The position numbers and the translations under genes are program-made. The notes below the pieces were generated by a model, which saw only the letters and a program-made list of their open reading frames with translations, was not told the origin of the DNA and searched no databases. DNA of 64,000 bases from positions 28,793-92,792 of the forward strand of contig NW_021832868.1 in NCBI RefSeq assembly GCF_006345805.1, in the 5' to 3' direction. This stretch comes from Octopus sinensis. Lineage: Eukaryota. Of this stretch, positions 1 to 37,700 are shown in pieces (position 1 is the stretch's first letter; the number at the start of each line of letters is the position of its first letter).

Positions 1-865
1 GCCGAACACTAGATGTAATTAGAGCTAATGGAGGATATAATGGATATTAAATAAATTTGTTCATTTTTTTGGGTTCTGAATTATCAATGAATGGAAAACC
101 GTATAAATATAATATTTTTTAGACAAACTAAAAAATAAAGCAAAACTTTATTTAATGTTTTAAATCGATAGAAGTTATTTTTTAAATATTGTTTCATAGT
201 AAATTCATGAGAAAATGCCTTTTCAATTTTTATTTTTGTTCACTGTATATATTTACTATTTTTTGGGATAATTTAGCTTAAGTAAATAAATTATATTGGA
301 CTAAAAAATATTTTGCCAATGATAGAATAACACAGTATTGCGATATTTTATTTATAATTACTTCTAAACGTTTATTCGTTAATTGTGTTTGAAATTATTT
401 TGAAATTCTTTAAAAAAACTTAACTGGTTGATCTATTGTATTTCGAAAACAATATTACAAAATAACAGCGCATTATTCAAATAATTAATTTAAAGTTAAG
501 AAGTTGGTTTAGGAGTTTCTGCAGTTTTGCGAATCATAAATCCACCAGATGAAATAATAGCTTTCTGAGTTAATTCTTTTAATTCGTCGTCATTTCCAAT
601 TGCAACGACAATGTGACGTGGTTTAATTCTTCTTTTTCCACATTTTACTGCTGTATTTCCAGCAAGTTCAAGCATTTCAGCCACAGCATATTCCAATACT
701 GCGCACATATATACTGCGGCAGGAATTCCTACTCGCATTCGGGTTTCATGACGGAGACACCGGTGAATGCGTCCAACTGGAAACTGTAACCCGGCCCGAA
801 CGGATTTGCTTTTAGCCTTTGACCGTACTTTTCCTCCTTTTCCTCTTGAAGACATTATACTCTGC
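1..865. repeat. Direct segmental duplication of 6002-6864 (Tc1 3' end + spacer + H2A)
   Basis: Near-identical to 6002-6864 (offset 6001, then 6000). Identity stops 10-11 nt upstream of the H2A ATG, where LINE A1 begins. Confidence 0.95.
496..855 (-). CDS. H2A: Histone H2A, divergent (119 aa)
   Basis: [50 protein letters not shown] are H2A signatures. True ATG at 855; the ORF-track extension MFFPQSI comes from the LINE tail. Confidence 0.95.
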
Positions 866-3800
866 GGAAAAAACATTATTAGTTAAGGGAGTTAAAAACT
901 AACTAAGTAGACCTTCGGCATCGCTGCCTTTTCAGTCTCCATCTCACACACGCCTCCCTACACACAACCACAGGTTAAGACTTACCGCCTTACCTGCCAT
1001 CCAGAAATAATCTTCTCTAGGACCTCAGAGAGGCCTTTGAGAGATGATTCCTGGGCGTCGGAGAGCTCAGTCCGGAATCCTAAGCCATAGGCTAGCCTTA
1101 TGGCTCGTCTTCTTACTTTTTTAAGCACGTCAACATGCTTATCCCTGTCCTCATAGAGGTACCAAGCGTGGACGCCATAGGTCAAGACGGGTAACACCAT
1201 GGCGTTAAACACGCGGAACCAGGCACCTCTGCTCAAGCGGAAAGCACGCAACGCACCTAATCGCTGCATTGCACGCATTTTCGTACGTGCAATGTGATCA
1301 TCAAACTTACCGGACGGCTTAAAGAGCACGCCCAAATAAGTCATCCGATCAACTGCAGCGATTGCTGACCCGCTCAGCAATAACCTAGGAACAAAATTAG
1401 TGTAACCCCTCGTCCTTTTACAGACTTTAAGGACACTGCACTTGTCCGCGCACATTCTCAGACCCCTACTCCCACACCAGTTTGCAAGTCCATCCACAGC
1501 AACCTGAAGCCTACGACACGCACACTCGGTTTCATTGAGTGATCCCAGAGGATAATGTCGTCTGCATAGATTACCATTTCAGTACGAGCATTGACTGGCA
1601 TAGGCGCAGTGGCCATAAACACATTGAATAGTGTCGGACTGAGCACAGAGCCCTGAGGGACCCCGCGAAGGACTGTTGCGACTTTAGAAAAGACCCCCTG
1701 ATGCCGCACGACCTGCCTGCGAGATTCAAGAAACCCCGACAGCCAGCGCCTTAGACACGGAGAAACCCCACACGTGGCAAGGGAACTCCGGAGGCCGTCG
1801 TGCCACACCGAGTCGAAGGCCTTTTCAATGTCGAGACTAACTAAAATACCGCATTCCCTTTTCTGGAGGGCGTTCTTCATACCAGACGACACCTTGTGAA
1901 GGCAGTCCCCGCATGAGCGGCCCTCCCTGAAGCCCCATTGGAACTCAGGGAGGGCGTCTGCAACCATCAGCTCCTCCAGGAGCCTTTGGTGCATAATTCT
2001 TTCTAGGATTTTAGATATTGCGGGGAGCAAGGAAATGGGCCTATATCCCCCGGGGACATCATGTGGCTTCCCGGGCTTTCCGATAAGGATTACCTCAGCC
2101 ACTTTCCACCTGGAGGGAATCATCCCAAGTCGCAAGCTCCCGTTAAATAAAACCTTTAGTGCAGTGATTAACCGCGGCGGGGCCTTCTTAAAGATGGCCA
2201 TCGGGATCCGATCCAAACCCGCCGCGGTGTTCTTACTTCGGGAGATTGCTGCCAGAATCTCCGCTTCAGTAATTTCGCCTGCATCGTTCCTTGATATGCC
2301 CAGCTGGCAGCGCTTGTCCCACGACAATATCTGCTGGACAGTATCAAAGGACGATGTCTCTACGAACTGACCTCCGTCAGTTCCCGAGATGCCATTGAGA
2401 TGGGCTGAAAGTATTTCAACCACCTCAACCGGGTCCGAAGCGAGGTTTCCATCAGAGCGTTTAAGGCGCACTGACTTAGCCCCCCTTCTCCCCGACAGGC
2501 TCTTCAACTGCTTCCAGAAGTCCGGAAAGCGAGGGTCCACCCTTCGGCAGGCCCTCTCCCACCGCGAACTTTCGAGTTCGCGGATTTCTCTTCGGATCTC
2601 CCTCTGAAGCCGGCTAATCCAGCCACGAAACCAAACACGGTTCTCCTCGTAAATGCATTTGTCCCGTAGTCTGGATAGCCGGCGCTTGAACCTAATTTTA
2701 TTTAAGATCCGGTGAGGGAGCGTGGAATGTGACTGACCCTGCACTGAGTTCTGTTTGAAATTATCTCGCATGTAATCAGTCAGGGCAGCATTGATTCCAT
2801 TATCAAGCGCCTCCAACTCACGTATGTTGGCGCAGGTATTCCCCACCAGAAGTGAGGGCAACCTGCTGGCCATGAAACTCTCCAGGTTAGCCCAGGAACC
2901 CACCCGGAGGTCAAAGTATCCTGGGACCCTTTGAGGAACTGGCTCACGGAGTTCGTGCAATAGAGGCAGATGGTCGCTCCCAATATCGGGCAATAAAATA
3001 GTTTTACTAACCCAATTTAGAAGACCGGGACTGACCAGAGCAAGCCCTAGCCAGTCACGTCCTCCCCTCGCGTCGACGTGGTTTGGCTCGCTCGAAGTCC
3101 GGATTTCCAGCCCGAGGTCTTCAACCAGCGTCTTCAGAGCCAAACCATGCGAGTTGGTTACCCTGAAACCAAGATCTTGATGCTTGGCATTCAGGTCCCC
3201 AACAACCATGGCCTTCGGATGCTTTTCAAAGAACTCCCGTACGTGCCAGGAGCACGCCGTAAAGTTCTTCGAGTACATCCCACCTAGGTAAAATGTTAAC
3301 TCGCCTATGCGAATTCTCACTTGGAGGAATTCACACAAGCTACATGAACATATACCTGGACTCTGCAAGGCAAGGTAGGGCTTGTAGAAGAGGCTAGTTC
3401 CTGTGCCACATATTGACCCCTGTTTCCAGGGTATGTGACGACAGTTGTAGCCATCAACTACGTACGGACCCCCCTTTACCTTCGTTTCGTTGACCACCAG
3501 AATGTCCGCACTCGTGGTGGCCAACATCCTCTGAACGGCGTCCCTTTTTCCTTCCAAGGAACGCGCGTTCACCGATATGATGTTGAGCATCATATCGGTT
3601 CTTCGCCAAGGATCTTCTTGGCCTCGGCAACGTTGCAGTGTAGCATTTCCTCTACACTGCAATTCATCTCCCTACAAAATTTTAATAGGGAAACGCATAA
3701 TTGCACCGCAGGACTAATACTGTCCTGCGGTACACGCTCGCCAGGGGCTGAGTGCAATGGCATCTCCACGTATGGAGGACGCCTTTTCAGCCCCAGGTTG

Positions 3801-5324
3801 TGCCGGACGGCGCCGCCGTTAGCCGCCTCAGAAGGCATTGCCGGCTTAGGCAACCAAGCGGACTCGGAAGCTTTCACCTGCTTTGCCAACTTTGTCGGCG
3901 AAGGCTGCACCGACCCACACGTAGCATGGCTCACAGGTTCCACTGTCTTCGCCACCCAAACGGATTTGGAAGGTTTGGCCAGTATCGCCTGCTTGCCAGG
4001 TTTTGGCGCAGGGTGCGCGACGCGACGCGGGCGACTTACTGTTGGGATTACATCCCCACCTACCTTTCGGGTTGCCTCCTTGAACTTGGGGCAACCTCTG
4101 AAGTTGGCAGTGTGTCCCAACTTACCACAGTTGACACACTGCCTCTCCTTGGATGGTGAGGGGCACGTCTTGCGACCATGCTCCCCACCGCAAATAAGGC
4201 ACTTCGCCTTATCCGGGCACTTTGTGGAGATGTGCCCGAACCCCTGACACCGAAAGCATTGGGTGGCTTTCGGGCGGGGCCAGGCAGCTCTCATCCTAAT
4301 GTAGCCGATCCTAGTACCCAGAAGTACTAGGCGCTCGGCTTCCGCAGGAGATCCCAGGATGACCTCCACCACTTCAAGAGGGCGGTTACCCTGCTTGAAG
4401 CGTGCAAGGGCAGAGGCACTGGGGTACTCCCGCTGTATGTGTCCTAAAAGGTCATTATCCTCGAAGTCCCGGGGGACCCCGAGGAGCAGGACTCTTACCT
4501 GCCTTACCTTTTGTTCAATCCTGACAAGCCGATGCATGCCAGGACCGAACGGGCTGGACTTCTCCAGCTCTCCTTTAAAGCTGAAGAAGTCCTCCTCCTT
4601 CTCCCACCCAAGCAGGAATTGGGTGGGCTCCCTCTTCAGGACTCTATACAGCTTTGAAGGCTGGATAGAGTCTAACGTACCTAAGATCTTTATGACCGAG
4701 GCCTTCCCACTTGTAGGGAGGACCTCAAGTCGTGCCACAGCACCGAAGGTAATTCTGCCCCCGGCGCCAGTGGTCTTCTTTGGGTGTGCATCCACCTGAT
4801 CGGACACACACCCAGTACCTAAAACATTAGGGGGGGTTGGACGGCCAGCCGCACGTTTGGGTTTCCCCACCGTGTACCAACCGTCCTCAAGGGCAACCTT
4901 ATTTCCTGCCGTACCCACCGGACGGCCTCAGGAGACGACACCCTGTTGGCATTAATTGACTTACCTAGGCTGGGTTTGGCACCACTAGACAAACCGCAAA
5001 CACGTGGCGAACCAGCATGCTGTGCGGTTGTCGTGGCTACCAAACAATTAGTACCTGTTGCAGCTGCTGCTCCCCCGACACCAGCCAAAGGGGCAGCAGA
5101 GGAGAAGAGTCTTCAGTGAGTGCTGAACCCATCTGGGAGGGTCCAGGCTTCGACCTCCTGCTTTGACCTAAAGAATTAAAAACACCACTAGAATAGCCGG
5201 AAGCACGTGGCGGTGAACCACGGCTCCGGCAGTTCATCGTAGTGGCACACTGAACCGTCTTGTCCTCCGGGGAGTGCGAAGCGGGAACGCCTCCACTTCT
5301 GCATAGTCTTCTTAGTGCAGACAG
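866..5324 (-). mobile_element. Non-LTR retrotransposon family A, copy A1 (full length; APE-RT with CCHC-knuckle ORF1, Jockey/I-like group)
   Basis: ORF1 with three CCHC-type knuckles, ORF2 with APE and RT, and a 3' UTR shared with the copy at 24434-24554. 3' end abuts H2A -10; 5' end is continuous with H3 codons 1-28. Confidence 0.95.
982..3593 (-). CDS. LINE A1 ORF2, APE endonuclease + reverse transcriptase (870 aa after repairing one 1-nt deletion near 1530)
   Basis: APE motifs NARSL, VVNETK, GDLNAKH, GSDHLP; RT motifs YRPISLL, FQWGFR, DIEKAFDSV, GVPQGSVLSP, YADD. 2612 nt versus 2613 for the intact B1 ORF2. Confidence 0.93.
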
Positions 5325-5408
5325 CTTGCGAGCAGATTTTGCAGACAACTGTTTCCTTGGTACTTTTGCACCAGTAGATTTTCGAGCCGTTTGTTTTGTT
5401 CTAGCCAT
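3590..5408 (-). CDS. LINE A1 ORF1 (gag-like nucleic-acid chaperone) initiating at a histone H3 ATG; ~606 aa in consensus
   Basis: CFRCQGFGHISTKC, CLICGGEHGRKTC, CVNCGKLGH knuckles. Two 1-nt C-run deletions (near 5100 and 4920) are intact in copy A2, giving one frame from MARTKQ to EEPI*. Confidence 0.85.
5325..5408 (-). other. H3: Histone H3 5' segment (codons 1-28) fused to LINE A
   Basis: MARTKQTARKSTGAKVPRKQLSAKSARK; H3 homology stops after K27. Confidence 0.95.
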
Positions 5409-5431
5409 ATTTTTTTTTTATTTCAGACAGG

Positions 5432-6051
5432 ACCTATGCCAAACATGCAATATGCTCTCGAAATATTTTGGGAGCGAGTTATTTTAAGTGATGAAAGTAA
5501 ATTTAATATGTAAAATAGTGATGTAAGAACTTTAGTATCGAGAAATCGCAAGGAAAAATATTTAACAAACAATCTTACAAAAACAGTAAAATTCGGTAAA
5601 GGAACTATCATGAACTATCATGCCATAATCAATATTGGATTTATTAATTTGGTTTTGATAAAAGAGAAGATTGGTGGAGCTTTGCATGTTAACATATTAA
5701 CGAATAATATGATCATTTCTGAACAAAATCAAACATAAAGATCCTAGTTTCCAACAAGACAATGATCTGAAACATACTTCGGCAATAGCAAAGAGCTTTT
5801 TTTCAAGTAAATAATATCGAATTACTACTATGGCCAACACAAAGCCCAGATTTAAACCCTATAGATAATGTTTGGGCCTTTATTAAAGAAAAAATCAAAA
5901 GAAGAGATTTTTGAAAAAAGAACATTTATTTGCAAAAATATCATCCATTTGGAATTAACTCAAAATAGAATACGCAAAAAGTCTTATTAATAGCATGCCA
6001 GGCCGAACACTAGATGTAATTAGAGCTAATGGAGGATATAATGGGTATTAA
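5432..6051 (+). pseudogene. Tc1/IS630-type transposase remnant
   Basis: WERVILSDESKFN, TVKFGKG, FQQDNDLKH, WPTQSPDLNPIDNVW, SMPGRTLDVIRANGGYNGY*, with stops and frameshifts; 5' part is replaced by the A1 junction. Confidence 0.88.
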
Positions 6052-6495
6052 ATAAATTTGTTCATTTTTTTGGGTTCTGAATTATCAATGAATGGAAAAC
6101 CGTATAAATATAATATTTTTTAGACAAACTAAAAAATAAAGCAAAACTTTATTTAATGTTTTAAATCGATAGAAGTTATTTTTTAAATATTGTTTCATAG
6201 TAAATTCATGAGAAAATGCCTTTTCAATTTTTATTTTTGTTCACTGTATATATTACTATTTTTTGGGATAATTTAGCTTAAGTAAATAAATTATATTGGA
6301 CTAAAAAATATTTTGCCAATGATAGAATAACACAGTATTGCGATATTTTATTTATAATTACTTCTAAACGTTTATTCGTTAATTGTGTTTGAAATTATTT
6401 TGAAATTCTTTAAAAAAACTTAACTGGTTGATCTATTGTATTTCGAAAACAATATTACAAAATAACAGCGCATTATTCAAATAATTAATTTAAAG

Positions 6496-6854
6496 TTAAG
6501 AAGTTGGTTTAGGAGTTTCTGCAGTTTTGCGAATCATAAATCCACCAGATGAAATAATAGCTTTCTGAGTTAATTCTTTTAATTCGTCGTCATTTCCAAT
6601 TGCAACGACAATGTGACGTGGTTTAATTCTTCTTTTTCCACATTTTACTGCTGTATTTCCAGCAAGTTCAAGCATTTCAGCCACAGCATATTCCAATACT
6701 GCGCACATATATACTGCGGCAGGAATTCCTACTCGCATTCGGGTTTCATGACGGAGACACGGTGAATGCGTCCAACTGGAAACTGTAACCCGGCCCGAAC
6801 GGATTTGCTTTTAGCCTTTGACCGTACTTTTCCTCCTTTTCCTCTTGAAGACAT
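6496..6854 (-). CDS. H2A: Histone H2A, second copy (1-nt deletion near 6750; pseudogene or assembly error)
   Basis: Identical to 496-855 except GACACCGG > GACACGG. Confidence 0.9.
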
Positions 6855-7022
6855 TATACTCTGCTAACTATTTTTTGTTTACATAATAAAAAAATGGCAT
6901 TCCGAAATTTCGTTGAAGATTTTTTTCGGAATGGTCCTTTTTTGCATCAGTCGAAAAAAATTTGGCAATGATACTTTTTTTGCATAGGTTGAAAATAGTG
7001 TTTATTTAGAGAATTTTTCCTA
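6855..7022. promoter_or_regulatory. Bidirectional H2A-H4 promoter (168 bp)
   Basis: Lies between divergent ATGs. Carries ATTCCG/CGGAAT and (G)CAATGATACTTTTTTTGCAT motifs that recur upstream of other histone genes. Confidence 0.75.
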
Positions 7023-7463
7023 ATGTCTGGACGTGGTAAAGGTGGCAAAGGAGGAAAGAGTGGTGCAAAACGATTTCGAAAGATATTAATTGACAATATA
7101 CAAGGAATTACTAAGCCAGCAATAAGAAGACTATGTCGAAGAGGAGGTGTTCGAAGAATTTCTGGAAAAATTCATGCAATTACAAGACTGTCTCGAGGAG
7201 GACCTCTTCCCAACGAAAAGGTTCCTGATGCGGACGGTTGGCATACCGTGGGGAAACCCAAACGTGTTGCCAGCCGTTTTTAATAGTTTAGGTACTGGGT
7301 GTGTGTCTGCGCAGGTAGATGCACACCCAAAGAAGACTGCTCGCGCCGGGGGTAGAATTACCTTCGGCGTGGTGGCTAGAGAGGTCTAGTGGCCTCGGGC
7401 AAAAAGGCCTCGGTCATAAAGATCCTGGGGACGCTTGACTCTATACAGCCATCTAGGCGGTAT
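7023..7463 (+). mobile_element. Histone H4 codons 1-50 (7023-7172) fused in frame to the 5' end of LINE family B ORF1 (7173-7463)
   Basis: H4 ...[10 protein letters not shown] continues as [21 protein letters not shown], homologous to A ORF1 DGWYTVGKPKR. 7426-7463 matches the B1 sequence at 14428-14464. Confidence 0.9.
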
Positions 7464-9800: not shown

Positions 9801-10390
9801 AGTTGGATGTAGATAAGTCTCTACAGGCTTATATACAGTCAGCCCTTTCCTGACGTTTAGTCAGCAAGAGGCGCTAGACTGCACCTTCTCGAAGGTCTAC
9901 AGTGCCAGAGAAGAAAAGGAAGAAAAAGAGGAGGTGCGTGGAGTGCCACCTTCTGCTCACTTCGAAGGCTCTGGACTTAGTAAAATTACTTAGTTTCTTT
10001 TTTTAATAAAGCTAGTTAGTATATTTATGAAATTGCTAATTTTTATCTGGTTAATTTGTAAGGAATATCAATGTATTTTATTAAAAAAATTATGTATAAT
10101 TTATCCACCAAATCCGTAAATTGTCCTACCTTGACGTTTCAAGGCATTAACAACGTCCATTGCGATAACAGTTTTTCTTTTGGCATGCTCAGTGTAAGAA
10201 ATACAATCACGAACAGTTTGCTCAATAAAAATCTTAAGGACAGAACGTGTCTCCTCGTAAATTTTTCCAGAAATTCTTCGAACACCCCCTCTTCGACATA
10301 GTCTTCTTATTGCTGGCTTAGTAATTCCTTGTATATTGTCAATTAATATCTTTCGAAATCGTTTTGCACCACTCTTTCCTCCTTTGCCCC
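9720..10390. repeat. Inverted segmental duplicate of ~19040-19790 (H4 + 3' flank + RTE remnant)
   Basis: Near-identical reverse complement. Confidence 0.9.
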
Positions 10391-10406
10391 TTACCACGTC
10401 CAGACT
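10101..10406 (-). CDS. H4: Histone H4 (start codon damaged, CCTAATGTCT > CCTAGTCT, plus small indels)
   Basis: [48 protein letters not shown]. Confidence 0.9.
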
Positions 10407-10551
10407 AGGAAAAATTCTCTAAATTGGAAAATTTTTATTTAATAATTAATTAGAGAGGCTGTTAGTGAGGTAACATAAGGAGACCTTCGGCATTCCTGCG
10501 TTTTCGGTCCAGCACACACGCTCGCCTCTCTACACAACCACAGGTTAGGAC

Positions 10552-13164
10552 TTACCGTCTTACCTGCCACCCAGTCATTATCTTCTCTAGGACCTCAGGG
10601 AGGCCTTTGAGGGACAATTTTTGGGCGTTGGAGAGCTCATCACGCCATCCTAAGCCATAGGCTAGCCGGATAGCTCGTCTTCTTACTTTCTTAAGCGCGT
10701 CAACGTGCTTCTCCCTGTCCTCGCAGAAGTGCCAAGCGTGCACGCCATAGGTTAACACGGGTAACACCATGGCGTTGAACACACGGAACCAGGCACCTCT
10801 CCTCAAGTGGAAAGCACGCAACGCGCCTAATCGCTGCATTGCACGCATTTTAGTGCGTGCAATGTGATCATCGAACTTACCTGACTGCTTGAAGACCACG
10901 CCCAAGTAGGTCGTCCGATCAACTATAGCGATCGCTGACCCGTCCAGCGATAACCTAGGGATAAAATTAGTGTAACCCCTCGTCCTTTTACAGACTTTAA
11001 GGACACTGCACTTGTCCGCACACATCTTTAGACCCCTACTCCCACACCAGTGTACAAGTTCATCCACAGCAACCTGTAGCCTACGACACGCACACTCTGG
11101 TTTCATCGACTGATTCCAGAGGATAATGTCGTCTGCATAGATCACCATTTCAGTACGAGCATTGACTGGCATAGGCGCAGAGGCCATAAAGATATTAAAC
11201 AGTGTGGGACTCAGCACAGAACACTGAGGGACCCCGCGAAGGACTGTTCCGACTTTAGAAAAGACCCCCTGGTGTCGCACGACCTGACCGCGAGATTCGA
11301 GGAACCCCGACAGCCAGCGCCTTAGACACGGAGAAACCCCACACGTGGCGAGGGAACTCCGCAGGCCGTCGTGCCACACCGAGTCGAAGGCCTTTTCTAT
11401 GTCAAGACTAACTAACATACCAAACTCACTTTTCTGGAGGGCGTTCTTCATTTCGGAAGACACCTTCCACAAGCAGTCTCCACATGAACGACCCTCCCTG
11501 AAGCCCCATTGGAACTCCGGGAGGGCGTCAACCACCGTCAGCTCCTCCAGGAGCCTTCGGTGCATGATCCTTTCTAGGATTTTAGATATAGCGGGAAGCA
11601 AGGAAATGGGCCTATATCCCCCGGGGACATCATGCTGCTTCCCAGGTTTTCCAATGAGGATTACCTCAGCCACTTTCCACCTGGAAGGAATCATCCCAAG
11701 TCGCAAGCTCCCGCTAAACAAAACCTGTAAGGCCGTGATCAACAACGGCGGGGCCTTTTTGAAGATGGACATAGGGATCCGATCTAGCCCCGCCGCGGTG
11801 TTCTTACTTCGGGAGATCGCTGCCAGGATCTCCCTTTCGGAAACTTCGCCTGCATCGACCCTTGATATGTCCAGCTGGCAGCGCTTGTCCCAAGACAATA
11901 CCTCCTGGATAGTAACAAAAGACGACGTCTCTACGAACTGACTTCCGTCAGTTCCCGAGATGTTGTTGAGGTGGGTTGAAAATATATCAGCCACCTCAAC
12001 CGGGTCCGAGGCGAGGGTTCCATCAGAGCGCTTAAGGCGCACTGACTTTGCCTCCCCTCTCCCCGACAGGCTCTTCAGTTGTTTCCAGAAGTCCGGAAAG
12101 CGCGGGTCCACTCTTTGGCAGGCCCGCTCCCACCGTGAACTTTCGTGTTCACGGATTTCCCTCCGGATCTCCCTCTGAAGCCGGCTGATCCAGCCGCGAA
12201 ACCAGACACGGTTCTCCTGGTAGACGCATTTGTCCCGCAGTCTGGACAGCCGGCGCTTGAATCTAATTTTATTTAGCACCCGGTACGGGAGCGTGGAATG
12301 TGCCTGGCCCTGTACTGGGTTCTGTTTGAAATTATCTCGCATATAATCAGACAGGGCAGCATTGATTCCATTATCTAACGCCTCCAACTCTCGTATGTTG
12401 GCGCAGGTATTCCCCACCAGGAGTGAGGGCAACCTGCTGGCCATGAACCTCTCCAGGTTGGCCCAGGAACCGGACCGGAGGTCAAAGTATCCTGGGGCCC
12501 TTTGAGGAACTGGCTCACGGAGTTCGTGCAATAGAGGCAGATGGTCGCTCCCAATATCAGGCAATAAAATTGTGTTACTAACCCAATTTAGCATCCCGGG
12601 GCTGACCAGAGCAAGGCCTAGCCAGTCTTGTCCTCCCCGCGAATCGATGTGGTTTGGCTCGCTTGAAGATCTGATTTCCAACCCGAGGTCTTCAACCAGC
12701 GTCTTTAGAGCCAAACCATGCGCGTTGGTTACCCTGAAACTGAGCTCTTGGTGCTTGGCATTCAGGTCCCCAACGACCATCGCCTTCGGATGCTTTCCAA
12801 AGAACTCCCGTACGTGCCAAGAACACGCCGTAAAGTTCTTCGAATACATCGCCCCTAGGTAAAAGTTTAAATTACCTATGCGAATCCTCACTTGGAGGAA
12901 TTCACATAGGCTACAAGAACATATACCTGAGCTCCGGAGAGCAAGGTACGGCTTGTAGAAGAGGCTAGTTCCAGTGCCACATGTTGACCCCTGTTTCCAG
13001 GGTATGTGACAGCAGTTGTAGCCATCAACTACGTACCGATCCTGCTTTAACTTTGTTTCGTTGACCACCAGGATGTCCGCACTAGTGGTGGCCAACATCC
13101 TCCGAATCGCGTCTCCTTTGCCTGACAAGGAGCGCGCGTTCACCGATATGATGTTGAGCATCAT
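10552..13164 (-). CDS. LINE B1 ORF2, uninterrupted APE-RT (870 aa)
   Basis: Single ORF with all APE and RT motifs (YADD). No RNase H or C-terminal CCHC seen. Confidence 0.95.
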   Translation of the reverse strand: MMLNIISVNARSLSGKGDAIRRMLATTSADILVVNETKLKQDRYVVDGYNCCHIPWKQGSTCGTGTSLFYKPYLALRSSGICSCSLCEFLQVRIRIGNLNFYLGAMYSKNFTACSWHVREFFGKHPKAMVVGDLNAKHQELSFRVTNAHGLALKTLVEDLGLEIRSSSEPNHIDSRGGQDWLGLALVSPGMLNWVSNTILLPDIGSDHLPLLHELREPVPQRAPGYFDLRSGSWANLERFMASRLPSLLVGNTCANIRELEALDNGINAALSDYMRDNFKQNPVQGQAHSTLPYRVLNKIRFKRRLSRLRDKCVYQENRVWFRGWISRLQREIRREIREHESSRWERACQRVDPRFPDFWKQLKSLSGRGEAKSVRLKRSDGTLASDPVEVADIFSTHLNNISGTDGSQFVETSSFVTIQEVLSWDKRCQLDISRVDAGEVSEREILAAISRSKNTAAGLDRIPMSIFKKAPPLLITALQVLFSGSLRLGMIPSRWKVAEVILIGKPGKQHDVPGGYRPISLLPAISKILERIMHRRLLEELTVVDALPEFQWGFREGRSCGDCLWKVSSEMKNALQKSEFGMLVSLDIEKAFDSVWHDGLRSSLATCGVSPCLRRWLSGFLESRGQVVRHQGVFSKVGTVLRGVPQCSVLSPTLFNIFMASAPMPVNARTEMVIYADDIILWNQSMKPECACRRLQVAVDELVHWCGSRGLKMCADKCSVLKVCKRTRGYTNFIPRLSLDGSAIAIVDRTTYLGVVFKQSGKFDDHIARTKMRAMQRLGALRAFHLRRGAWFRVFNAMVLPVLTYGVHAWHFCEDREKHVDALKKVRRRAIRLAYGLGWRDELSNAQKLSLKGLPEVLEKIMTGWQVRR

Positions 13165-14464: not shown

Positions 14465-14469
14465 GTTTA

Positions 14470-24554: not shown

Positions 24555-27500
24555 CACCAATTTGGACAATTTGGACACACGTCCAATTTGGACACACGTC
24601 CCATAAGTGCACCGAAAAAGTTCGTTGCTTGGTCTGTGGTGGCGAACACCGACACAATAGGTGTCCGAACTCAGACCCCAGACCAAATGACCCTGCTGTC
24701 AAGACCTGCATAAACTGCAACAGTCCTGGACACTGGGCATGTTACGGTGGATGCCCACTCGCCAAAGCCGCGTCTGCAGCCTTACGGGCTGTGAGAAATC
24801 CGCCGGCCAGCAACCCAGCTCGCTGGGTGAAAGCCGAACGCACAGAGTCGATCTGGACAAAGAGGCCAGTTGTGAATCCGATCAAGACTGATGTCTGCAT
24901 TCAGACATCGGCGGACTCCGACTTTGATTTTAAACTCGACCCGAAGCCGACGGCTGACTCTTGTTCCAGTACCAGAGCTGGCCGCACGGCTGCTGCTCGC
25001 AAGAAGACAAACACCCCTCCAGACAATATCTCATCGCAAAGAGGTGCCCTCTCGGACGAAGACCTGCACAACAGAGACTCCCTTATGGAATTCTTTCATC
25101 GTTGTGTGGGAGCTCTAACCAAACTTGGTGTGGAACCTGAGGTGCTGCAACGGCTCCTATTAGAGGGGAGCACGCCAGCAAAATAGCCCCAGTCAAAATC
25201 ATCGCTGTGAATGCCCGATCTATCAAGAGACGGCACCAGGACTTCGTTGAGATGGTAAACAGCGGCCATCCAGACATTATTGTCGTCAACGAGTCTAAGC
25301 TCAAAGAAAACCACTCGTACGAACTTCCGGGCTACCGGTCAGTGGACCTAAAATGGGGAAGCTGCTCTACGCCAGGGACTGGCTCGAGCATCTTCTACGC
25401 CGAAAACCTCCAAATCCGTAACCTCACCATCATCGAGAGCACGGTGTGCGAATTCCTCTCTCTTGAGGTGAAAACTGATTCCTTCTGGATAAAGGTCGGT
25501 GGAATATATTGCAAATATCTCCCCCCCTGCATCAGATTGATTGACGAATTCTTCTCAAGCACAGCTCATTGCTTCTTATCGGAGACTTAAACTCGAAGCA
25601 CACGGCGTTTGGATGTCGGTTAACCAACCAAGATGGTCGAACACTGAAGAAGGTCACTGACAAGCTTGGTATTTTCGTCAGGACATCCGAAGACCCGAAC
25701 CACCACTCGCCCTTTGGCGGGGACAACCTGTGCCTGTGCATCTGTTCTCACTCTGTCGCTAACCTTATGGAAAAGCCTACAGTCCTTGACGATATCGGAA
25801 GTGACCACCTACCAATGGAGATCAAAATTCACACTAGCATTGTTAGACAAGAACACATTTCCTCTCACTACAATCTCTCAAAGATCAACTGGCCACACTA
25901 CAGGAGCTCCATAAGTGCATTCCTGCATGACAACGGTCGCCCTGTTGGGTATAACTCAGCCCTCGACATCGACTCCGCAAGCGATAAGCTAAGCAAATTC
26001 ATGCTTCAGTATCTAACGTCGTACGGAGAATTGTCAAGTGCAGACCGCGCACGGAGGACCACTCTGAGCGTGAAAGTGAAGATCATCCTCAACGAAAGGA
26101 AGCGGCTGAGAAATAAACTCAAACGCTGTGTGGACCCAGCTGACAGGGGAAGACTTAGGAACATGATCTCGGAAATTGGTTATAAGGTCCACGTCGCGAC
26201 AAAGCTGGAAGCAGCCAGGAAATGGCAGAAGGCTTGTCAAAACCGACTACAGAAACCCAAATTTCTGGGACTGTTTCCACAAAGTGGCTAACCTCGAAGG
26301 AAAATCCTCACCCCGAGGTTGTGCAACCAGTCTGGTATGCCCGCCTCGCCACAAGAGATGCCAACATATTTGCAGAACACCTGGCCACTATCCAGGAGGC
26401 CAATCCGGAAACGTCGCAAAACCGGGAGTCGGAGCCACTGCCGCGCCCACTGTCGCCGGACCATCACCCGATCACCATTGCAGAGGTGACCTGGGCCATC
26501 CGTTCGTCAAAAGGCAACGCACCGGGCCATGACAAAATACCGATGCGATTGTTTAAGGAAGCACCCGAAGACCTACATGTGTTCCTCGCGGATCTGTTTA
26601 CGGCAAGTCTCAAATGGGGCCATGTGCCGGAAAAATGGAAAATCTCAGAGGTCCGGATGATCAAAAAGCCTGCGAAACCGGTGAATCTCGCTAGCAGCTA
26701 CCGTCCCATAAGCCTAATCCCAACTATCTCAAGGCTGATGGAGAAAATTATGGCCAAGCGCCTCGACTTCCACGCCGAAGAGAAGAAAGTGCTGCTCCCG
26801 CAGCAATGGGGTTTTCGCTCTGGACGTAGCTGCGGTGACTGTTTCATTACGGTACAGTCCACCATCTCGAGAGCAACGGAGTTTAAAGAAACTTTATCTC
26901 TTGTATGTCTGGACATCTCAAAGGCTTTTGACAGCGTCTGGCACAGAGACCTCCTGGAAAGGATCGAACTCTGTGAGCCAACAGCGGAAGTCTTCCTCTG
27001 GATGCGCTGCTTCCTCTCAAATCGCTACTCTTTTATCTCTGAGTCGGGCTTCTTCTCAAGATATATTTCGCTCCGAAGGGGGGTTCCGCAGGGGTCCTGT
27101 CTCAGCCCAATCTTTTTCAATTTGGTAATGAGCAGTTTCCCCACACCCTCCGATCCCAGGACATCCCTACTCCTCTACGCGGACGATGTTCTCGTTCTGG
27201 ACACCTCGATGGACACCAATGCCTCGGAGAAACGACTTGCCGGCTACATTGAGGAGATAAAGAATTGGTGCATTGGTAAGCGACTCTCGCTGGCCATGGA
27301 CAAATCTGCATATCTCCAAATTAACCCAAGAAAGTCGCAAGATCGCAAACCCGGCTCTTTGGTGGAAATTGCTCGCCCTGAGAGCATACGTTACCTGGGG
27401 CTCACAATCGACGCAAACTCGAGATACCATTTGCATTTCAAACGGAGAAAAGGGAAAGCCATCGCCGCTCTCCGACTCCTAAGAAGCATGCACTTGAATA

Positions 27501-27924
27501 CAAATACCTTCCTATTTGTATACCATGCAACAATCTTGCCCAGCCTACTGTATGGTATGGAAGCTTGGTTCTACTCGAAACAATATGAGAAAATTCTGCG
27601 AAAATGCGAAAAAATACGGAGATACGCTCTAAAACTAGCCTATATGCTAAATCCATGGGAGCCTGTCCCAAGCTGGGCGGAGAGCAAGTCTCCAGAGCTA
27701 CGGCAGGCCATCGAGGCTTCTATCCGAACTTTTCGGAAACGCTCTAAAGTAACTGACCTATTCATCGATCGTGGAGAATAGCAGGTGTCCCTGCTCATAG
27801 ACAGACAAAGCGGACGAACCATGGAAGAGCTCGAATGCCCAAAGCAATCGTCTCGTCAAAATTACTTTCCGCACTAATTTTCTGTCTCGCTCTTCTTTCT
27901 TACAATAAAATTCTTCGTTCGTTC
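24555..27924 (+). mobile_element. LINE family C, copy C1 (5'-truncated in ORF1; ORF2 APE-RT ~25186-27781 with frameshifts)
   Basis: CLVCGGEH and CINCNSPGH knuckles; NARSIK, GDLNSKH, GSDHLP, YRPISL, GVPQGSCLSP, YADD. Ends AATAAAATTCTTC(GTTC)2 just upstream of H2B. Confidence 0.93.
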
Positions 27925-27945
27925 GAATATACAAATTTTGTTAAT

Positions 27946-28310
27946 ATTGGCACCTAAAGTTAGCACAAAAGGACAAAAAAGAGCTCCCATTAAAACAAAA
28001 AAATGTTTCCGTCGCTACAAAGAAAAAAAAGAAAAGGAAAACTTTTTCGATATATCTTATGAAAATTTTAAAGACAGTACATAATCAACTTGGGATGTCA
28101 AAGAGGCTATGATGGCTATGGACAGTTTACATTCGATGTTTATGACAAAATAAAAACCGAGGCTTCAAATTTAGTCTATCAGAATTCGAAGGCTACCATT
28201 ACCTCACGTGAAATACAGACTGCAGTTCGTCTGATTCTTCGGGTGAATTGGCAAAACATGCTATTACAGAAGGGTGCAAGGCAGTTACTAAGTACACAAA
28301 TACAAAATAA
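27946..28310 (+). CDS. H2B: Histone H2B, divergent, with several indels (pseudogene or error-prone copy)
   Basis: (M)[60 protein letters not shown]. Confidence 0.88.
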
Positions 28311-28710: not shown

Positions 28711-28800
28711 AACCAAAAAATTTTCGGAATGATACTTTTTTGCATTACTCCAAAAAATTTCGGAATAACGTTGTTTAAAAATTCGGAATAATATAAAACA
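28711..28800 (+). promoter_or_regulatory. Histone-type promoter with three AAATT(T)CGGAAT motifs
   Basis: CGGAAT at 28725, 28761 and 28784, upstream of the H3-like ATG at 28844. Confidence 0.65.
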
Positions 28801-28843
28801 AAAATAACTTGTCTGAATCGGTTCTGTCTGAAATAACAAAAAT

Positions 28844-28891
28844 ATGGCTAGAACACAACAAACTGCTCGAAAATCTACTGGAGCAAAATTT
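28844..28891 (+). pseudogene. H3: H3-like 5' stub (MARTQQTARKSTGAKF)
   Basis: 16 H3-like codons, then joined to the AT-rich repeat. Confidence 0.8.
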
Positions 28892-30126
28892 CTTTGCCAT
28901 CATTGAGATATCCTTTCTGGTATTTACACTGTTTATAAGCTACTAGGTAGAATTGTGTTTTAATTAAAATTATCTTGATTCTTAGTTACCCAATTATTAA
29001 TAGAAAACATAATAAATTGTGGCACGTGTGAGCACTCTTTTTGACCAACCTTGTTGTCCTGTTGCATTATTTGGTCAATCTTTATTTTTTAATTTAATTG
29101 GATTAGAAGGAATATTTTGCGATGTAGTTTCTTTTAATTAATAAATTGTCTGAAATTTCATCATTTTGTAATATTTGCAAGTTTATTCTTTCAATCTGTT
29201 TATTCCACTTATTTTGACATCTGCTTTATCTTTATTTATTGAATTCTACGTTTTTTTTTTGATAGAAAGTTTTATTTTATATATTCTTATAGCAGATTTT
29301 TATTTTTTTAAATTTTGAAAATATTCTTTTATTTTAAAATTGAATGATAATTTGTGACATGGGTTCCTGTTCATTTCTCTTCTTTAACATATTTTATCCG
29401 TTAAATAAAGTTGATTGATTTACCTCGTCTCGATTATTTGATAAAATGTTAATTATTTCAGCGGCCTGATAGAATGGAGATTCGAATTTATCCAATCACA
29501 ACGAAGGGTTTGTTTCATAGTCTTTTTAACTCGAACCTATCTATAATTTTTTTATCTAAACTTATTTCCGACACTAAATTCGTATTTACTATTCTGTCAT
29601 TTATTTTCCTATTCATTGCCTTATAGTAGGCTAAGTTTCCATCAATCGGATTTAAATTTGAATTTTTTGGAATTGGACAATTATTATAGCACTATCGGAA
29701 AAACAAAATTTGGCTAAGGTTGTCGTCAATTATGGTTGTCGCCAATTATGAGTGTGCTCGCTCTACGGAATGGGATTTATAAACAAAATATTAAAACAGC
29801 AATACATAAGAAATTATTTCAAGTACAATGGGCCTTGTTTATCACTTGGTAGTTTTGTAACTCCTCCTTTGTCATCTCTCTCGATCAACCGTGGAGGTCG
29901 ACAACAAAATTGGTATAGAAAGTGTGATCATTGATGTAATGCTCGAACCTCTCATAATAACTATTGAATACTGCAGTGATCTAATAAATATAAACGTTCA
30001 GATCAAATTACTTGAAAAAATTCTTTTAAATTCAGGATGGTCAATGAAATGGCGATAATCAGAATCATATGGATTTATGATTGTTTTGTATTATTATTAT
30101 TTGCAACATACGTAGAATCATATTAG

Positions 30127-34612: not shown

Positions 34613-34701
34613 GTAATTCCTTGTATATTGTCAATTAATATCTTTCGAAATCGTTTTGCACCACTCTTTCCTCCTTTGCCACCTTTACCACGTCCAGACA
34701 T
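34613..34701 (-). pseudogene. H4: Histone H4 5' fragment (codons 1-30) between LINE B3 and the RLE element
   Basis: [30 protein letters not shown]; identical to the other H4 5' ends. Confidence 0.92.
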
Positions 34702-34721
34702 TAGGAAAAATTCTCTAAATT

Positions 34722-37700
34722 GGAAATTTTTTATTTAATAATTAATTAGAGAGGCTGTTAGTGAGGTAACATAAGGAGACCTTCGGCATTCCTGCCTTTT
34801 CGGTCCAGCACACACGCTCGCCTCTCTACACAACCACAGGTTAGGACTTACCGTCTTACCTGCCACCCAGTCATTATCTTCTCTAGGACCTCAGGGAGGC
34901 CTTTGAGGGACAATTCCTGGGCGTTGGAGAGCTCATCACGCCATCCTAAGCCATAGGCTAGCCGGATGGCTCGTCTTCTTACTTTCTTAAGCGCGTCAAC
35001 GTACTTCTCCCTGTCCTCGCAGAAGTGCCAAGCGTGCACGCCATAGGTTAACACGGGTAACACCATGGCGTTGAACACACGGAACCAGGCACCTCTCCTC
35101 AAGTGGAAAGCACGCAACGCGCCTAATCGCTGCATTGCACGCATTTTAGTGCGACCCCCTGGTGTCGCACGACCTGACCGCGAGATTCGAGGAACCCCGA
35201 CAGCCAGCGCCTTAGACACGGAGAAACCCCACACGTGGCGAGGGAACTCCGCAGGCCGTCGTGCCACACCGAGTCGAAGGCCTTTTCTATGTCAAGACTA
35301 ACTAACATACCAAACTCACTTTTCTGGAGGGCGTTTTTCATTTCGGAAGACACCTTCCACAAGCAGTCTCCACATGAACGACCCTCCCTGAAGCCCCATT
35401 GGAACTCCGGGAGGGCGTCAACCACCGTCAGCTCCTCCAGGAGCCTTCGGTGCATGATCCTTTCTAGGATTTTAGATATAGCGGGAAGCAAGGAAATGGG
35501 CCTATATCCCCCGGGGACATCATGAGGCTTCCCAGGTTTTCCAATGAGGATTACCTCAGCCACTTTCCACCTGGAAGGAATCATCCCAAGTCGCAAGCTC
35601 CCGCTAAACAAAACCTGTAAGGCCGTGATCAACAACGGCGGGGCCTTTTTGAAGATGGACATAGGGATCCGATCTAGCCCCGCCGCGGTGTTCTTACTTC
35701 GGGAGATCGCTGCCAGGATCTCCCTTTCGGAAACTTCGCCTGCATCGCCCCTTGTTATGTCCAGCTGGCAGCGCTTGTCCCAAGACAATACCTCCTGGAT
35801 AGTAACAAAAGACGACGTCTCTACGAACTGACTTCCGTCAGTTCCCGAGATGTTGTTGAGGTGGGTTGAAAATATATCAGCCACCTCAACCGGGTCCGAG
35901 GCGAGGGTTCCATCAGAGCGCTTAAGGCGCACTGACTTTGCCTCCCCTCTCCCCGACAGGCTCTTCAGTTGTTTCCAGAAGTCCGGAAAGCGCGGGTCCA
36001 CTCTTTGACAGGCCCGCTCCCACCGTGAACTTTCGTGTTCACGGATTTCCCTCCGGATCTCCCTCTGAAGCCGGCTGATCCAGCCGCGAAACCAGACACG
36101 GTTCTCCTGGTACACGCATTTGTCCCGCAGTCTGGACAGCCGGCGCTTGAATCTAATTTTATTTAGCACCCGGTACGGGAGCGTGGAATGTGCCTGGCCC
36201 TGTACTGGGTTCTGTTTGAAATTATCTCGCATATAATCAGACAGGGCAGCATTGATTCCATTATCTAACGCCTCCAACTCTCGTATGTTGGCGCAGGTAT
36301 TCCCCACCAGAAGTGAGGGCAACCTGCTGGCCATGAAACTCTCCAGGTTAGCCCAGGAACCCACCCGGAGGTCAAAGTATCCTGGGACCCTTTGAGGAAC
36401 TGGCTCACGAAGTTCGTGCAATAGAGGCAGATGGTCGCTCCCAATATCGGGCAATAAAATAGTTTTACTAACCCAATTTAGAAGACCGGGACTGACCAGA
36501 GCAAGCCCTAGCCAGTCACGTCCTCCCCTCGTGTCGACGTGGTTTGGCTCGCTCGAAGTCCGGATTTCCAGCCCGAGGTCTTCAACCAGCGTCTTCAGAG
36601 CCAAACCATGCGAGTTGGTTACCCTGAAACCAAGATCTTGATGCTTGGCATTCAGGTCCCCAACAACCATGGCCTTCGGATGCTTTTCAAAGAACTCCCG
36701 TACGTGCCAGGAGCACGCCGTAAAGTTCTTCGAGTACATCCCACCTAGGTAAAATGTTAACTCGCCTATGCGAATTCTCACTTGGAGGAATTCACACAAG
36801 CTACATGAACATATACCTGGACTCTGCAAGGCAAGGTAGGGCTTGTAGAAGAGGCTAGTTCCTGTGCCACATATTGACCCCTGTTTCCAGGGTATGTGAC
36901 GACAGTTGTAGCCATCAACTACGTACGGACCCCCCTTTACCTTCGTTTCGTTGACCACCAGAATGTCCGCACTCGTGGTGGCCAACATCCTCTGAACGGC
37001 GTCCCTTTTTCCTTCCAAGGAACGCGCGTTCACCGATATGATGTTGAGCATCATATCGGTTCTTCGCCAAGGATCTTCTTGGCCTCGGCAACGTTGCAGT
37101 GTAGCATTTCCTCTACACTGCAATTCATCTCCCTACAAAATTTTAATAGGGAAACGCATAATTGCACCGCAGGACTAATACTGTCCTGCGGTACACGCTC
37201 GCCAGGGGCTGAGTGCAATGGCATCTCCACGTATGGAGGACGCCTTTTCAGCCCCAGGTTGTGCCGGACGGCGCCGCCGTTAGCCGCCTCAGAAGGCATT
37301 GCCGGCTTAGGCAACCAAGCGGACTCGGAAGCTTTCACCTGCTTTGCCAACTTTGTCGGCGAAGGCTGCACCGACCCACACGTAGCATGGCTCACAGGTT
37401 CCACTGTCTTCGCCACCCAAACGGATTTGGAAGGTTTGGCCAGTATCGCCTGCTTGCCAGGTTTTGGCGCAGGGCGCGCGACGCGACGCGGGCGACTTAC
37501 TGTTGGGATTACATCCCCACCTACCTTTCGGGTTGCCTCCTTGAACTTGGGGCAACCTCTGAAGTTGGCAGTGTGTCCCAACTTACCACAGTTGACACAC
37601 TGCCTCTCCTTGGATGGTGAGGGGCACGTCTTGCGACCATGCTCCCCACCGCAAATAAGGCACTTCGCCTTATCCGGGCACTTTGTGGAGATGTGCCCGA

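What the first reader, a model, noticed from the sequence alone, without database searches (positions are those of the whole stretch)
856..34722. LINE 3' ends cluster immediately upstream of histone start codons
Seen 3' junctions: A1 at H2A -10 (865/866); B1 at H4 -19 (10424/10426); B3 at H4 -19 (34720/34722); B2 at H3-like -80, cutting a CGG|AAT promoter motif (14988); C1 at about H2B -22 to -30 (27916-27924). All are co-oriented with the histone gene. The sites share little primary sequence, which suggests recognition of a promoter-bound factor or chromatin state rather than a fixed DNA motif. Caveat: B1 and B3 share an identical junction and may be one duplicated event.
Basis: partly seen in the sequence, partly recalled or inferred. 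Interest (0 to 1): 0.8.

Follow-up and report, generated by a model that had tools for sequence, protein, structure and literature searches.

The report
LINEs that target histone gene promoters
Several families of jumping genes (LINEs) in an octopus genome have inserted repeatedly at the same few nucleotides just upstream of the start codons of a divergent set of histone genes, and they carry pieces of histone genes at their own front ends, which points to a kind of target-specific retrotransposon I could not find described.

Summary
B1 and B3 are one duplicated event.

The window matches an Octopus sinensis contig. Sixteen more loci from that assembly gave 262 kb of non-redundant sequence. 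These hold 33 distinct LINE-tail/flank junction strings. Of these, 23 lie within about 135-160 nt upstream of, and co-oriented with, a histone-type start (1.8% expected for a 135-nt window, binomial P about 6e-33).

Independent events with different tails and families (A/B/B', C/C'/C'') hit the same nucleotides:
- H2A -9/-10
- H4 -19
- H2B -21 to -25
- H3 -31 and -17
- a CGG|AAT boundary in the H3 promoter

These are genuine genomic insertions:
- A1 (866-5433) is flanked by a 1.43-kb target-site duplication.
- A2+C1 sits in one H2B promoter with at most 3 nt lost.
- One locus shows a twin-priming-like structure.

Families A and C/C' carry 5' leaders built from H3, H4 and H2B gene fragments. 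For A and C' these are in frame with ORF1.

Most hot spots lie 22-24 nt after a T-run/TATA-like box. How the site is chosen remains unresolved. I found no published histone-targeting LINE.

The parts
1..865 (-). Right-hand copy of the A1 target-site duplication: H2A -10, the H2A gene (496-855, intact 119 codons) and its 3' flank. It continues beyond the window start.
   Evidence: 99.58% identical over 1,436 bp to 5434-6864. The H2A protein is encoded identically on 5 O. sinensis contigs.
866..5433 (-). LINE A1, a complete 4,568-bp element. It comprises a histone-derived leader (5325-5433; H3 ATG at 5408), ORF1 with CCHC knuckles, ORF2 with APE and RT (frame broken once), a 3' UTR, and the tail TTTTTTCC.
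   Evidence: Both termini are defined by the flanking duplication. Pfam domains. The leader is 100% identical over 89 nt to the variant H3 gene, from -5 to codon 28.
5434..6864 (-). Left-hand copy of the A1 target-site duplication (H2A with a broken reading frame, stop after 41 codons, plus 1.07 kb of 3' spacer).
   Evidence: it ends at ...GGCATAG|, where uninterrupted units continue with CTTTAATC. Reading frame.
6865..7022 (.). Unoccupied divergent H2A/H4 promoter (the empty site). Hot spots are at 6864|6865 (H2A -10) and 7003|7004 (H4 -19).
7023..7187 (+). H4 5' part, cut off at about codon 56 by another insertion.
10104..10424 (-). H4 pseudogene (ATG lost) starting at -19. This is the 3' flank of B1.
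10425..14477 (-). LINE B1, with an intact 870-codon ORF2 (APE+RT) and a 384-codon ORF1. Its 5' junction lies in the AT-rich stretch of the H3 pseudogene module.
14478..14987 (-). H3 pseudogene module (promoter, about 34 codons, 355-bp AT-rich stretch). The CGG|AAT hot spot is at its upstream end.
14988..18928 (-). LINE B2, 5'-truncated within ORF1, with tail TTTTCCTCCTCCT.
18929..19330 (+). H4 promoter remnant (-92 to -1) and a frameshifted H4 gene.
19905..20000 (+). H2B promoter up to about -25. This is the 5' flank of the A2+C1 composite insertion.
   Evidence: Aligned with native H2B promoters of L016 and L017.
20001..24554 (+). LINE A2, full length, with its leader starting at H3 -14. It is 99.1% identical to A1.
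24555..27924 (+). LINE C1, 5'-truncated in ORF1. It is joined to the A2 tail through a stuttered junction and ends in the tail (GTTC)n.
27925..28307 (+). H2B pseudogene from -22 (start codon TTG at 27947). This is the 3' flank of C1.
28764..29309 (+). Second H3 pseudogene module with an intact upstream promoter. It serves as the empty site for the B2 junction.
34613..34720 (-). H4 fragment from -19 (108 bp). This is the 3' flank of B3.
34721..38541 (-). LINE B3, with a B-type 3' end and an A-type body (switch at 35153). It is the same junction event as B1.
39796..43631 (+). LINE C2 with an inverted 5' segment (39796-40760). That segment carries an H2B-derived start (ATG at 40698 on the minus strand) and an H3-like peptide. 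The 3' flank begins AACTTGCA.

Best explanation
Several related APE-type non-LTR retrotransposon families integrate by target-primed reverse transcription into the core promoter/5' UTR region of a divergent, multi-copy histone gene family of Octopus sinensis. The families are A/B/B' and C/C'/C''. Their ORF2 proteins are about 30-35% identical between the A/B and C groups. Integration is always in the sense orientation.

The first nick falls on the histone template strand at a handful of nucleotide-precise hot spots:
- H2A -9/-10
- H4 -19
- H2B -21 to -25
- H3 -31 and -17
- the CGG|AAT boundary of a repeated promoter module

Second-strand cleavage is imprecise. The outcomes seen are a 1.43-kb duplication, losses of about 3 and about 20 bp, and a 150-bp loss with inverted cDNAs.

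My inference on site choice: the nick is placed by a ruler anchored on a T-run/TATA-like box about 23 bp upstream. The box would be read either directly by a LINE protein or through a host factor bound there. Local sequence at the nick is not what is read.

Families A and C/C' begin with leaders assembled from histone gene 5' parts. For A and C' the leader is in frame with ORF1. My inference is that this records repeated capture of histone 5' ends. It would also mean an element landing between a histone promoter and its ATG is transcribed from that promoter. Each insertion separates the histone gene from its promoter.
For: Shown:
- The five window junctions.
- Recurrent, independent junctions at the same nucleotides with different tails and families in 16 further O. 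sinensis loci.
- Enrichment with P = 6e-33 after collapsing duplicates.
- A1 is flanked by a 1,431-1,436-bp duplication that starts exactly at H2A -10.
- The A2+C1 composite has contiguous H2B promoter flanks at -25 and -22.
- 5' truncations go down to 16-33 nt of tail. One example is an 18-nt tail lying between the H2B TATA box and -21.
- In L003, inverted LINE pieces with the same unusual tail (TTTTTCCTCCAGGA) abut H4 -19 and H2A -9, with the whole intergenic promoter lost and a GGGAGG/CCTCCC microhomology joint.
- APE, RT and CCHC domains are present.
- The consensus of five A-type 5' regions is one open frame from the H3 ATG into ORF1.
- Leader composition: A has 89 nt 100% identical to variant H3 plus an H4-like segment. 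C' has an H2B start, 26 nt of H3 at 92%, and 33 and 23 nt of H4 at 88-91%. C' reads in frame into ORF1.
- Hot spots lie 22-24 nt after a T>=6 run in 6 of 8 sites, against 0.65% of background positions.
Against: - Sampling is biased. Every extra locus was retrieved through a histone protein, so copies elsewhere in the genome were not counted.
- A few junctions have no histone gene in the flank: 24547, L005:15831, and 43631 and L006:3905. The flanks of the last two begin with the H2B-leader-like AACTTGCA.
- The spacing rule is post hoc. The promoter modules are paralogues, so the sites are not independent. The two type-1 H3 sites have no T run; the -31 site lies 23 nt after a TATA box, and the -17 site fits neither.
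- No transcript data exist, so use of histone promoters and the position of the start sites are inferred.
- Most copies have broken reading frames. The assembly is PacBio-based, so some frameshifts may be sequencing errors.
- The variant histone genes have no recognisable histone 3' stem-loop, so they may not be replication-dependent genes at all.
Confidence: 0.75

Rival explanations
1. The junctions are chimeric retrocopies. Reverse transcriptase copies a histone mRNA to its capped 5' end, jumps to the 3' end of a LINE RNA, and the product is inserted as LINE plus histone cDNA.
For: - Junctions lie close to the transcription start sites predicted from TATA-like boxes.
- Extra G, GG or GGA sits between many A tails and the flank. 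This resembles the extra G seen at capped 5' ends in L1 insertions (from my own knowledge).
- Stuttered or stacked LINE-LINE joints (24548-24600; L004:18352) show that template jumping does happen.
Against: - The A1 flank runs 1.43 kb, far beyond any H2A mRNA, and is duplicated on the other side of the element.
- The A2+C1 5' flank is the same H2B promoter.
- LINE-flanked H3 and H2A genes keep their normal genomic neighbours.
- The CGG|AAT sites lie upstream of the TATA box.
Confidence: 0.05
2. One or a few chance insertions in a tandem histone array were multiplied by unequal crossing-over and segmental duplication, giving a false impression of targeting.
For: - B1 and B3, the C1/H2B junction (window, L003, L012), and L001:5931/18218 are clearly duplicated events.
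- The arrays are rearranged and contain recombinant elements.
Against: After collapsing duplicates there remain at least 14 family-by-site combinations with different tails. For example, H4 -19 carries the tails TTTTCCA, AAATTTCC, T7C7GGA, T5CCTCCAGGA and T5CCTCC. H2A -9/-10 was hit by A (two tails) and C'.
Confidence: 0.03
3. The breaks are made by the host, for example at open promoter complexes or R-loop edges of highly transcribed histone genes. Any LINE RNA nearby then uses the free 3' end, so the specificity belongs to the target and not to the elements.
For: - Different families converge on the same nucleotides.
- The same positions are also breakpoints of non-insertion events. One is a 14-nt deletion spanning H3 -31 to -17 (L001:15758, L017:5544). 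Another is a truncated unrelated LINE fragment joined at H3 -31.
Against: - Inserted copies have complete 3' ends with family-typical tails, and A1 has a target-site duplication. Both are typical of endonuclease-dependent TPRT.
- Other LINE and TE families in the same loci are not found with true 3' ends at these positions.
- A/B and C are related and could share one specificity.
Confidence: 0.12
4. The endonuclease itself reads a degenerate local DNA sequence or shape at each nick, with no upstream anchor.
For: - Two H3 hot spots both precede (T)CTGAAA.
- Three events cut before AAT(A/G)A.
- Several H2B-type flanks start with AACTTGCA.
Against: No common motif spans all the hot spots (H2A, H4, H2B, the two H3 sites and CGG|AAT). 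The best shared feature is the spacing from the T-run box.
Confidence: 0.3

Closest known systems
R1 and R2 elements of 28S rDNA, and other site-specific non-LTR retrotransposons of multicopy genes (Mutsu in 5S rDNA, Keno/Utopia in U2 snRNA genes, Dewa in tRNA arrays) (from my own knowledge)
   Same: - Many independent copies at the same nucleotide of a tandemly repeated host gene family.
- Fixed orientation.
- 5' truncations.
- Imprecise 5' junctions.
- No obvious promoter of their own.
   Different: - The target is a protein-coding Pol II gene family.
- There are several hot spots with unlike sequences rather than one site.
- Insertion is upstream of the coding region rather than inside the gene product.
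- The endonuclease is APE-type (like R1, unlike R2).
SLACS, CZAR and CRE of trypanosomatid spliced-leader genes, and NeSL-1 of C. elegans (from my own knowledge)
   Same: Insertion a few nucleotides downstream of the start site of a multicopy gene, in the sense orientation. The host promoter is thought to drive the element, and the element RNA starts with host leader nucleotides.
   Different: Those elements have a restriction-like endonuclease and a single site in a small-RNA gene. Here the endonuclease is APE-type, the leaders are 100-300 nt mosaics of histone coding sequence fused to ORF1, and promoter use is only inferred.
Dictyostelium TRE5-A (a non-LTR element about 48 bp upstream of tRNA genes) and yeast Ty3 (at Pol III start sites via TFIIIB) (from my own knowledge)
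   Same: Position-specific rather than sequence-specific integration, at a fixed distance from a promoter-bound complex of one gene class.
   Different: Those target Pol III genes, and the tethering factor is known. Here the genes are Pol II histone genes and tethering is only suggested by a 22-24-nt spacing.
L1 twin priming and U6/L1-type template-switch chimeras (from my own knowledge)
   Same: - Inverted 5' segments (C2).
- Inverted cDNA pieces joined at microhomology (L003).
- Stuttered LINE-LINE joints.
   Different: In L1 these are by-products at unspecific AT-rich sites. Here both primers of the twin event sit at histone hot spots on opposite strands.

Membership tests
APE-type non-LTR retrotransposon (LINE) | ORF2 with an apurinic-endonuclease-like domain followed by reverse transcriptase | tested here: met
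   Pfam matches to Exo_endo_phos, Exo_endo_phos_2 and RVT_1 in B1 ORF2 and in the C ORFs. The best PDB match is the L1 ORF2p RT region, E about 1e-13.
APE-type non-LTR retrotransposon (LINE) | Hallmarks of target-primed reverse transcription: complete 3' ends, variable 5' truncation, target-site duplication or deletion | tested here: met
   - 5' truncations from full length down to 16-33 nt.
- 1.43-kb duplication around A1.
- Losses of about 3, 20 and 150 bp at other insertions.
Site-specific non-LTR retrotransposon | Independent copies at the same nucleotide of a repeated target, in constant orientation | tested here: met
Site-specific non-LTR retrotransposon | Copies largely confined to the target genome-wide | not testable with these tools
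   Only histone-bearing contigs could be fetched. LINE ORFs are not on record as gene products.
R2 / NeSL / SLACS group | Restriction-like endonuclease C-terminal to the RT, and no APE domain | tested here: not met
   An N-terminal APE domain is present. ORF2 ends shortly after the RT.
R1 clade (or any named LINE clade) | Placement in an RT phylogeny with reference elements | not tested
   No reference library was at hand. The nearest database proteins are at most 29% identical. The endonuclease domain alone found no LINE endonuclease structure.
Factor-tethered integrators (Ty3, TRE5-A type) | Integration at a fixed distance from a promoter element, whatever the local sequence | tested here: inconclusive
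   A 22-24-nt spacing from a T-run box holds at 6 of 8 hot spots. The rule is post hoc and the promoter modules are paralogous.
Factor-tethered integrators (Ty3, TRE5-A type) | Physical interaction of an element protein with a host transcription factor | not testable with these tools
   Needs biochemistry.
Template-switch chimeric retrocopies (U6/L1 type) | The partner sequence is limited to the transcript and lacks its genomic neighbours | tested here: not met
   Histone flanks continue into genomic spacers and neighbouring genes.

The most novel reading that the evidence does not exclude
These would be the first non-LTR retrotransposons tethered to a Pol II core promoter. The element RNP docks on the complex bound to the T-run/TATA-like box of variant histone genes and nicks the template strand about 23 bp downstream, at or next to the start site. 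Every new copy is thereby handed a histone promoter. In addition, ORF1p carries a genuine H3 N-terminal tail (residues 1-28) plus an H4 segment. It would act as a histone mimic that uses histone import or chaperone routes, or histone-locus factors, to reach its target.
Probability: 0.2. Interest if true: 0.9.

Novelty: new variant of a known kind. Interest (0 to 1): 0.72.

Why it matters
Site-specific LINEs are the main natural models for programmable, RNA-templated insertion. Their known targets are rDNA, small-RNA genes, telomeres and microsatellites.

A group of LINE families homing to the promoters of protein-coding histone genes would add a new target class. They use several hot spots whose sequences differ but which sit at a constant distance from a promoter box. 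That gives a tractable case for asking how an APE-type element can be positioned without a fixed nick sequence.

The histone-derived leaders show how a promoter-less element can keep borrowing host 5' ends. They also produce an ORF1 protein that begins with an H3 tail.

The system also shows how a multigene family can be taken apart by its own specialised parasites. About 40% of the sampled histone-type starts have a LINE tail within 100 bp upstream (my own tally).

Tried and rejected
- **ORF2 homologue search.** Nothing closer than 29% identity, so no clade or census came from it.
- **Exact-product look-ups of four LINE ORFs.** None is on record.
- **PDB sequence searches with ORF2 and with the endonuclease domain.** Only generic L1/R2 RT and ExoIII matches, so no help with the clade.
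- **Rfam.** No histone 3' stem-loop and no other family. I therefore dropped the idea that the LINE 3' UTR mimics a histone stem-loop, and I weakened the S-phase argument.
- **Fourth LINE family (E) ending at H3 -31.** Rejected as a true 3' end. The fragment lacks its stop codon and 3' UTR, and it is a fixed part of the H4-H3 spacer.
- **Foreign sequence at H4 -19 in L001:1672 and L006:7898.** This is a microhomology rearrangement with the H2A spacer, so I did not count it.
- **B2-B1 as a head-to-tail LINE tandem with an H3 leader.** Corrected. The 524 bp between them is a stand-alone H3 pseudogene module.
- **A common nick motif.** None spans all sites.
- **Literature searches for histone-targeting LINEs.** Nothing relevant found.
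Full report
**What is in the window.** The window is AT-rich DNA (about 30% GC) carrying GC-rich LINEs. tblastn with canonical histones finds divergent H2A, H4, H2B and H3-like pieces. A self-comparison defines the LINE copies as follows.
- A1 (minus strand) and A2 (plus strand) are 99.1% identical.
- B1 and B2 are 99.1% identical, and about 87% identical to A.
- B3 has a B-type 3' end on an A-type body.
- C1 and C2 are 97% identical and have no nucleotide similarity to A or B.

ORF2 carries APE and RT domains, and ORF1 carries CCHC knuckles. An unoccupied divergent H2A/H4 promoter at 6865-7022 serves as the empty site for the A1 and B1 junctions.

**Origin and extra material.** The 119-residue H2A of the window is encoded identically on five contigs of GCA_006345805.1. 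Papers identify that assembly as Octopus sinensis. Locus L005 is the window in reverse and extends past its start. A variant H3 from these loci is named 'histone H3.2-like [Octopus sinensis]' and lies on eight contigs. Together with the window this gives 262 kb of non-redundant sequence. The LINE ORFs themselves are not on record as gene products, and the nearest ORF2 relatives are at most 29% identical. A genome-wide census was therefore not possible.

**The elements' true ends.** A1 is flanked by a direct duplication of 1,431-1,436 bp at 99.58% identity. The duplication begins exactly at H2A -10 and ends at ...GGCATAG|, where uninterrupted units continue with CTTTAATC. This is a target-site duplication. 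It fixes A1 as 866-5433 and shows that the 'H3-like' start at 5408 belongs to the element.

The first 89 nt of homology are 100% identical to the variant H3 gene, from -5 to codon 28. An H4-like segment follows (LSALRRLCRSGGV against H4 [12 protein letters not shown]). The majority consensus of five A-type 5' regions reads as one open frame from the H3 ATG into ORF1.

The C' family starts with an H2B-type ATG (MAPKK...). It then has 26 nt of H3 (KVPRKQLS) and two H4-like segments (IRNLCRSGG), in frame with ORF1. C2 has an H2B start and an H3-like KQRARESTGGK.

The B 'leader' is different. The 524 bp upstream of B1 form an H3 pseudogene module that also occurs without any LINE. B2 therefore sits in a pseudogene promoter.

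**A second clean insertion.** The 5' flank of A2 aligns with native H2B promoters up to about -25. The 3' flank of C1 resumes at H2B -22. A2 plus C1 (about 7.9 kb) thus occupies one H2B promoter with at most 3 nt lost. The joint between them is stuttered, which suggests template jumping or stacking.

In L004 an 18-nt A tail lies between the H2B TATA box and -21, replacing about 20 bp. In L003 a 1.1-kb A fragment abuts H4 -19, and an inverted 33-nt A tail abuts H2A -9. Both carry the same unusual tail, they are joined at a GGGAGG/CCTCCC microhomology, and the whole intergenic promoter is lost. This is a twin-priming-like product with both primers at hot spots.

**Census.** Distinct tail/flank combinations:

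| Site | Independent hits |
|---|---|
| H2A -9/-10 | A (two tails), C' |
| H4 -19 | B, B', A (three tails) |
| H2B -21 to -25 | C1, A (at least four tails) |
| H3 -31 | C', C'' |
| H3 -17 to -21 | A (two tails), C1 |
| CGG\|AAT boundary in H3 promoters | B, C', A |
| 5' ends of C'-type or similar AACTTGCA-type leaders | A, C', C'', C2 |

An automated count gives 33 distinct junction strings. Of these, 23 lie within about 135-160 nt upstream of, and co-oriented with, one of 70 histone-type starts. The expectation for a 135-nt window is 1.8%, and the binomial P is 6e-33. Several of the 10 'misses' are in fact histone flanks with mutated starts.

By my own tally, about 40% of sampled histone-type starts have a LINE tail within 100 bp upstream. 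Many downstream ORFs are still intact: 10 of 11 H2A copies, 7 of 16 H4 copies and 8 H3 copies. No H2B copy is scored intact, but two have 121-codon ORFs.

**How the site may be chosen.** Sequences at the nicks differ. Six of eight hot spots lie 22-24 nt after the end of a run of six or more T. These runs belong to boxes such as TTTTTTTGCAT and TTTTTTATTAT. The H3 -31 site lies 23 nt after a TATA box. Only 0.65% of background positions meet the T-run rule.

The rule was found after the fact, and the promoter modules are paralogues, so it is a lead and not proof. I infer a ruler anchored on that box. The box could be read by a LINE protein or by a host factor.

The full-length A1 leader starts at H3 -25, which is 28-29 nt after the TATA box. 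The hot spots therefore bracket the likely start site. No transcript data were available to check this.

**Rivals.**
- Chimeras with histone mRNA are contradicted by the A1 duplication, the A2+C1 flanks and the preserved genomic neighbours.
- Amplification of a few events is contradicted by the diversity of tails at identical flanks.
- Host-made breaks remain possible. The same positions are also breakpoints of a 14-nt deletion and of a truncated LINE fragment. However, the complete 3' ends and the duplication fit endonuclease-dependent insertion better.

**Comparison and novelty.** In behaviour these elements resemble R1/R2, the spliced-leader-gene elements and, for positional targeting, TRE5-A and Ty3. 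They differ in four ways: the target class, the several unlike hot spots, insertion upstream of a coding region, and histone-derived leaders fused to ORF1. Searches of the paper library found no description of histone-targeting LINEs. That is an absence of evidence within that library only. The clade was not determined.

**Caveats.**
- All data come from one PacBio-based assembly and from mostly small contigs.
- The loci were ascertained through histone genes.
- The frameshifts seen may include sequencing errors.
- The variant histone genes lack a detectable histone 3' stem-loop, so their biology is unknown.

Noticed in passing
L007 (1-2975), L008, L009; compare window 496-855, 10104-10391: The window's histones belong to a divergent family. 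H4 is about 77% and H2A about 58% identical to canonical histones. Intact, very compact quartets (H3, H4, H2B, H2A in 2.3-3 kb, 30-34% GC) occur in two unidentified sequencing runs and on a 2,255-bp contig of the Vollenhovia emeryi (ant) assembly. L007 and L008 look like a roughly 3-kb tandem unit. What this family is, and why an ant assembly holds it, is unexplained.
   Followed up: partly
window 1-1100; L007, L009, L017 whole: No histone 3' stem-loop (Rfam RF00032) was detected downstream of any variant histone gene, not even in the intact clusters. These genes may therefore not be replication-dependent histone genes.
   Followed up: partly
window 9632-9746 (-) and 19681-19804 (+); L015 365-564, 13476-13675 and more than 10 other loci: A roughly 200-bp 3' fragment of an unrelated LINE (ORF end ...DLARNRRAWTRMVQKIVS, about 50% identical to the ORF at window 30127-30669) is a fixed part of the spacer between H4 and H3. 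In several loci it is joined, without a stop codon, exactly at H3 -31.
   Followed up: partly
L001:15758, L017:5544 (H3 upstream): A 14-nt deletion removes exactly the stretch between the two H3 hot spots (-31 and -17) and leaves one extra G. This could be a footprint of an aborted insertion.
   Followed up: no
window 6865-7022, 28700-28843; promoters in L004, L012, L016, L017: The variant histone promoters are built from a repeated module of about 38 nt: CGG|AATGRYAC, a T run, GCAT or ATTAT, and about 20 nt. Related GCTTCCG...AAAAA motifs occur in the L007 and L009 promoters. The C-family tails (CCATTC)n are the reverse complement of the GGAATG core, and many A tails end in CCGGA.
   Followed up: no
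window 39796-40760 versus 40753-43631: C2 has its 5' part (leader and ORF1) inverted relative to ORF2, as in twin priming.
   Followed up: partly
window 34722-38541 (switch at 35153): B3 is a recombinant. It has a B-type 3' end (99% to B1) joined to an A-type body (about 94-95% to A1/A2), with a roughly 410-bp deletion relative to A.
   Followed up: partly
window 900-960, 10470-10530 (3' UTRs of A and B): A conserved short hairpin lies in the 3' UTR: GGCA-GCGA-TGCC in A and GGCA-GGAA-TGCC in B, with GNRA-type loops. It may be the element's RT recognition signal.
   Followed up: no
window 7188-9631 (ORFs 7435-7911, 7982-8455) and 32408-34612: Two other elements cut H4 genes. An integrase-like ORF pair follows H4 codon 56, and a 713-codon RT ORF follows the 108-bp H4 fragment at 34613.
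   Followed up: no
window 9632-10424 versus 19000-19795: The B2 / H3 pseudogene module / B1 block is flanked by inverted copies of H4 plus its 3' flank (99% identical). This rearrangement is not explained by a simple insertion.
   Followed up: no
window 44986-46101, 47759-48301, 61418-61732: The window also holds a pogo/Tc5-like DDE transposase ORF, further transposon-like ORFs, and a (CCN)-type microsatellite that reads as PNPNAN repeats.
   Followed up: no
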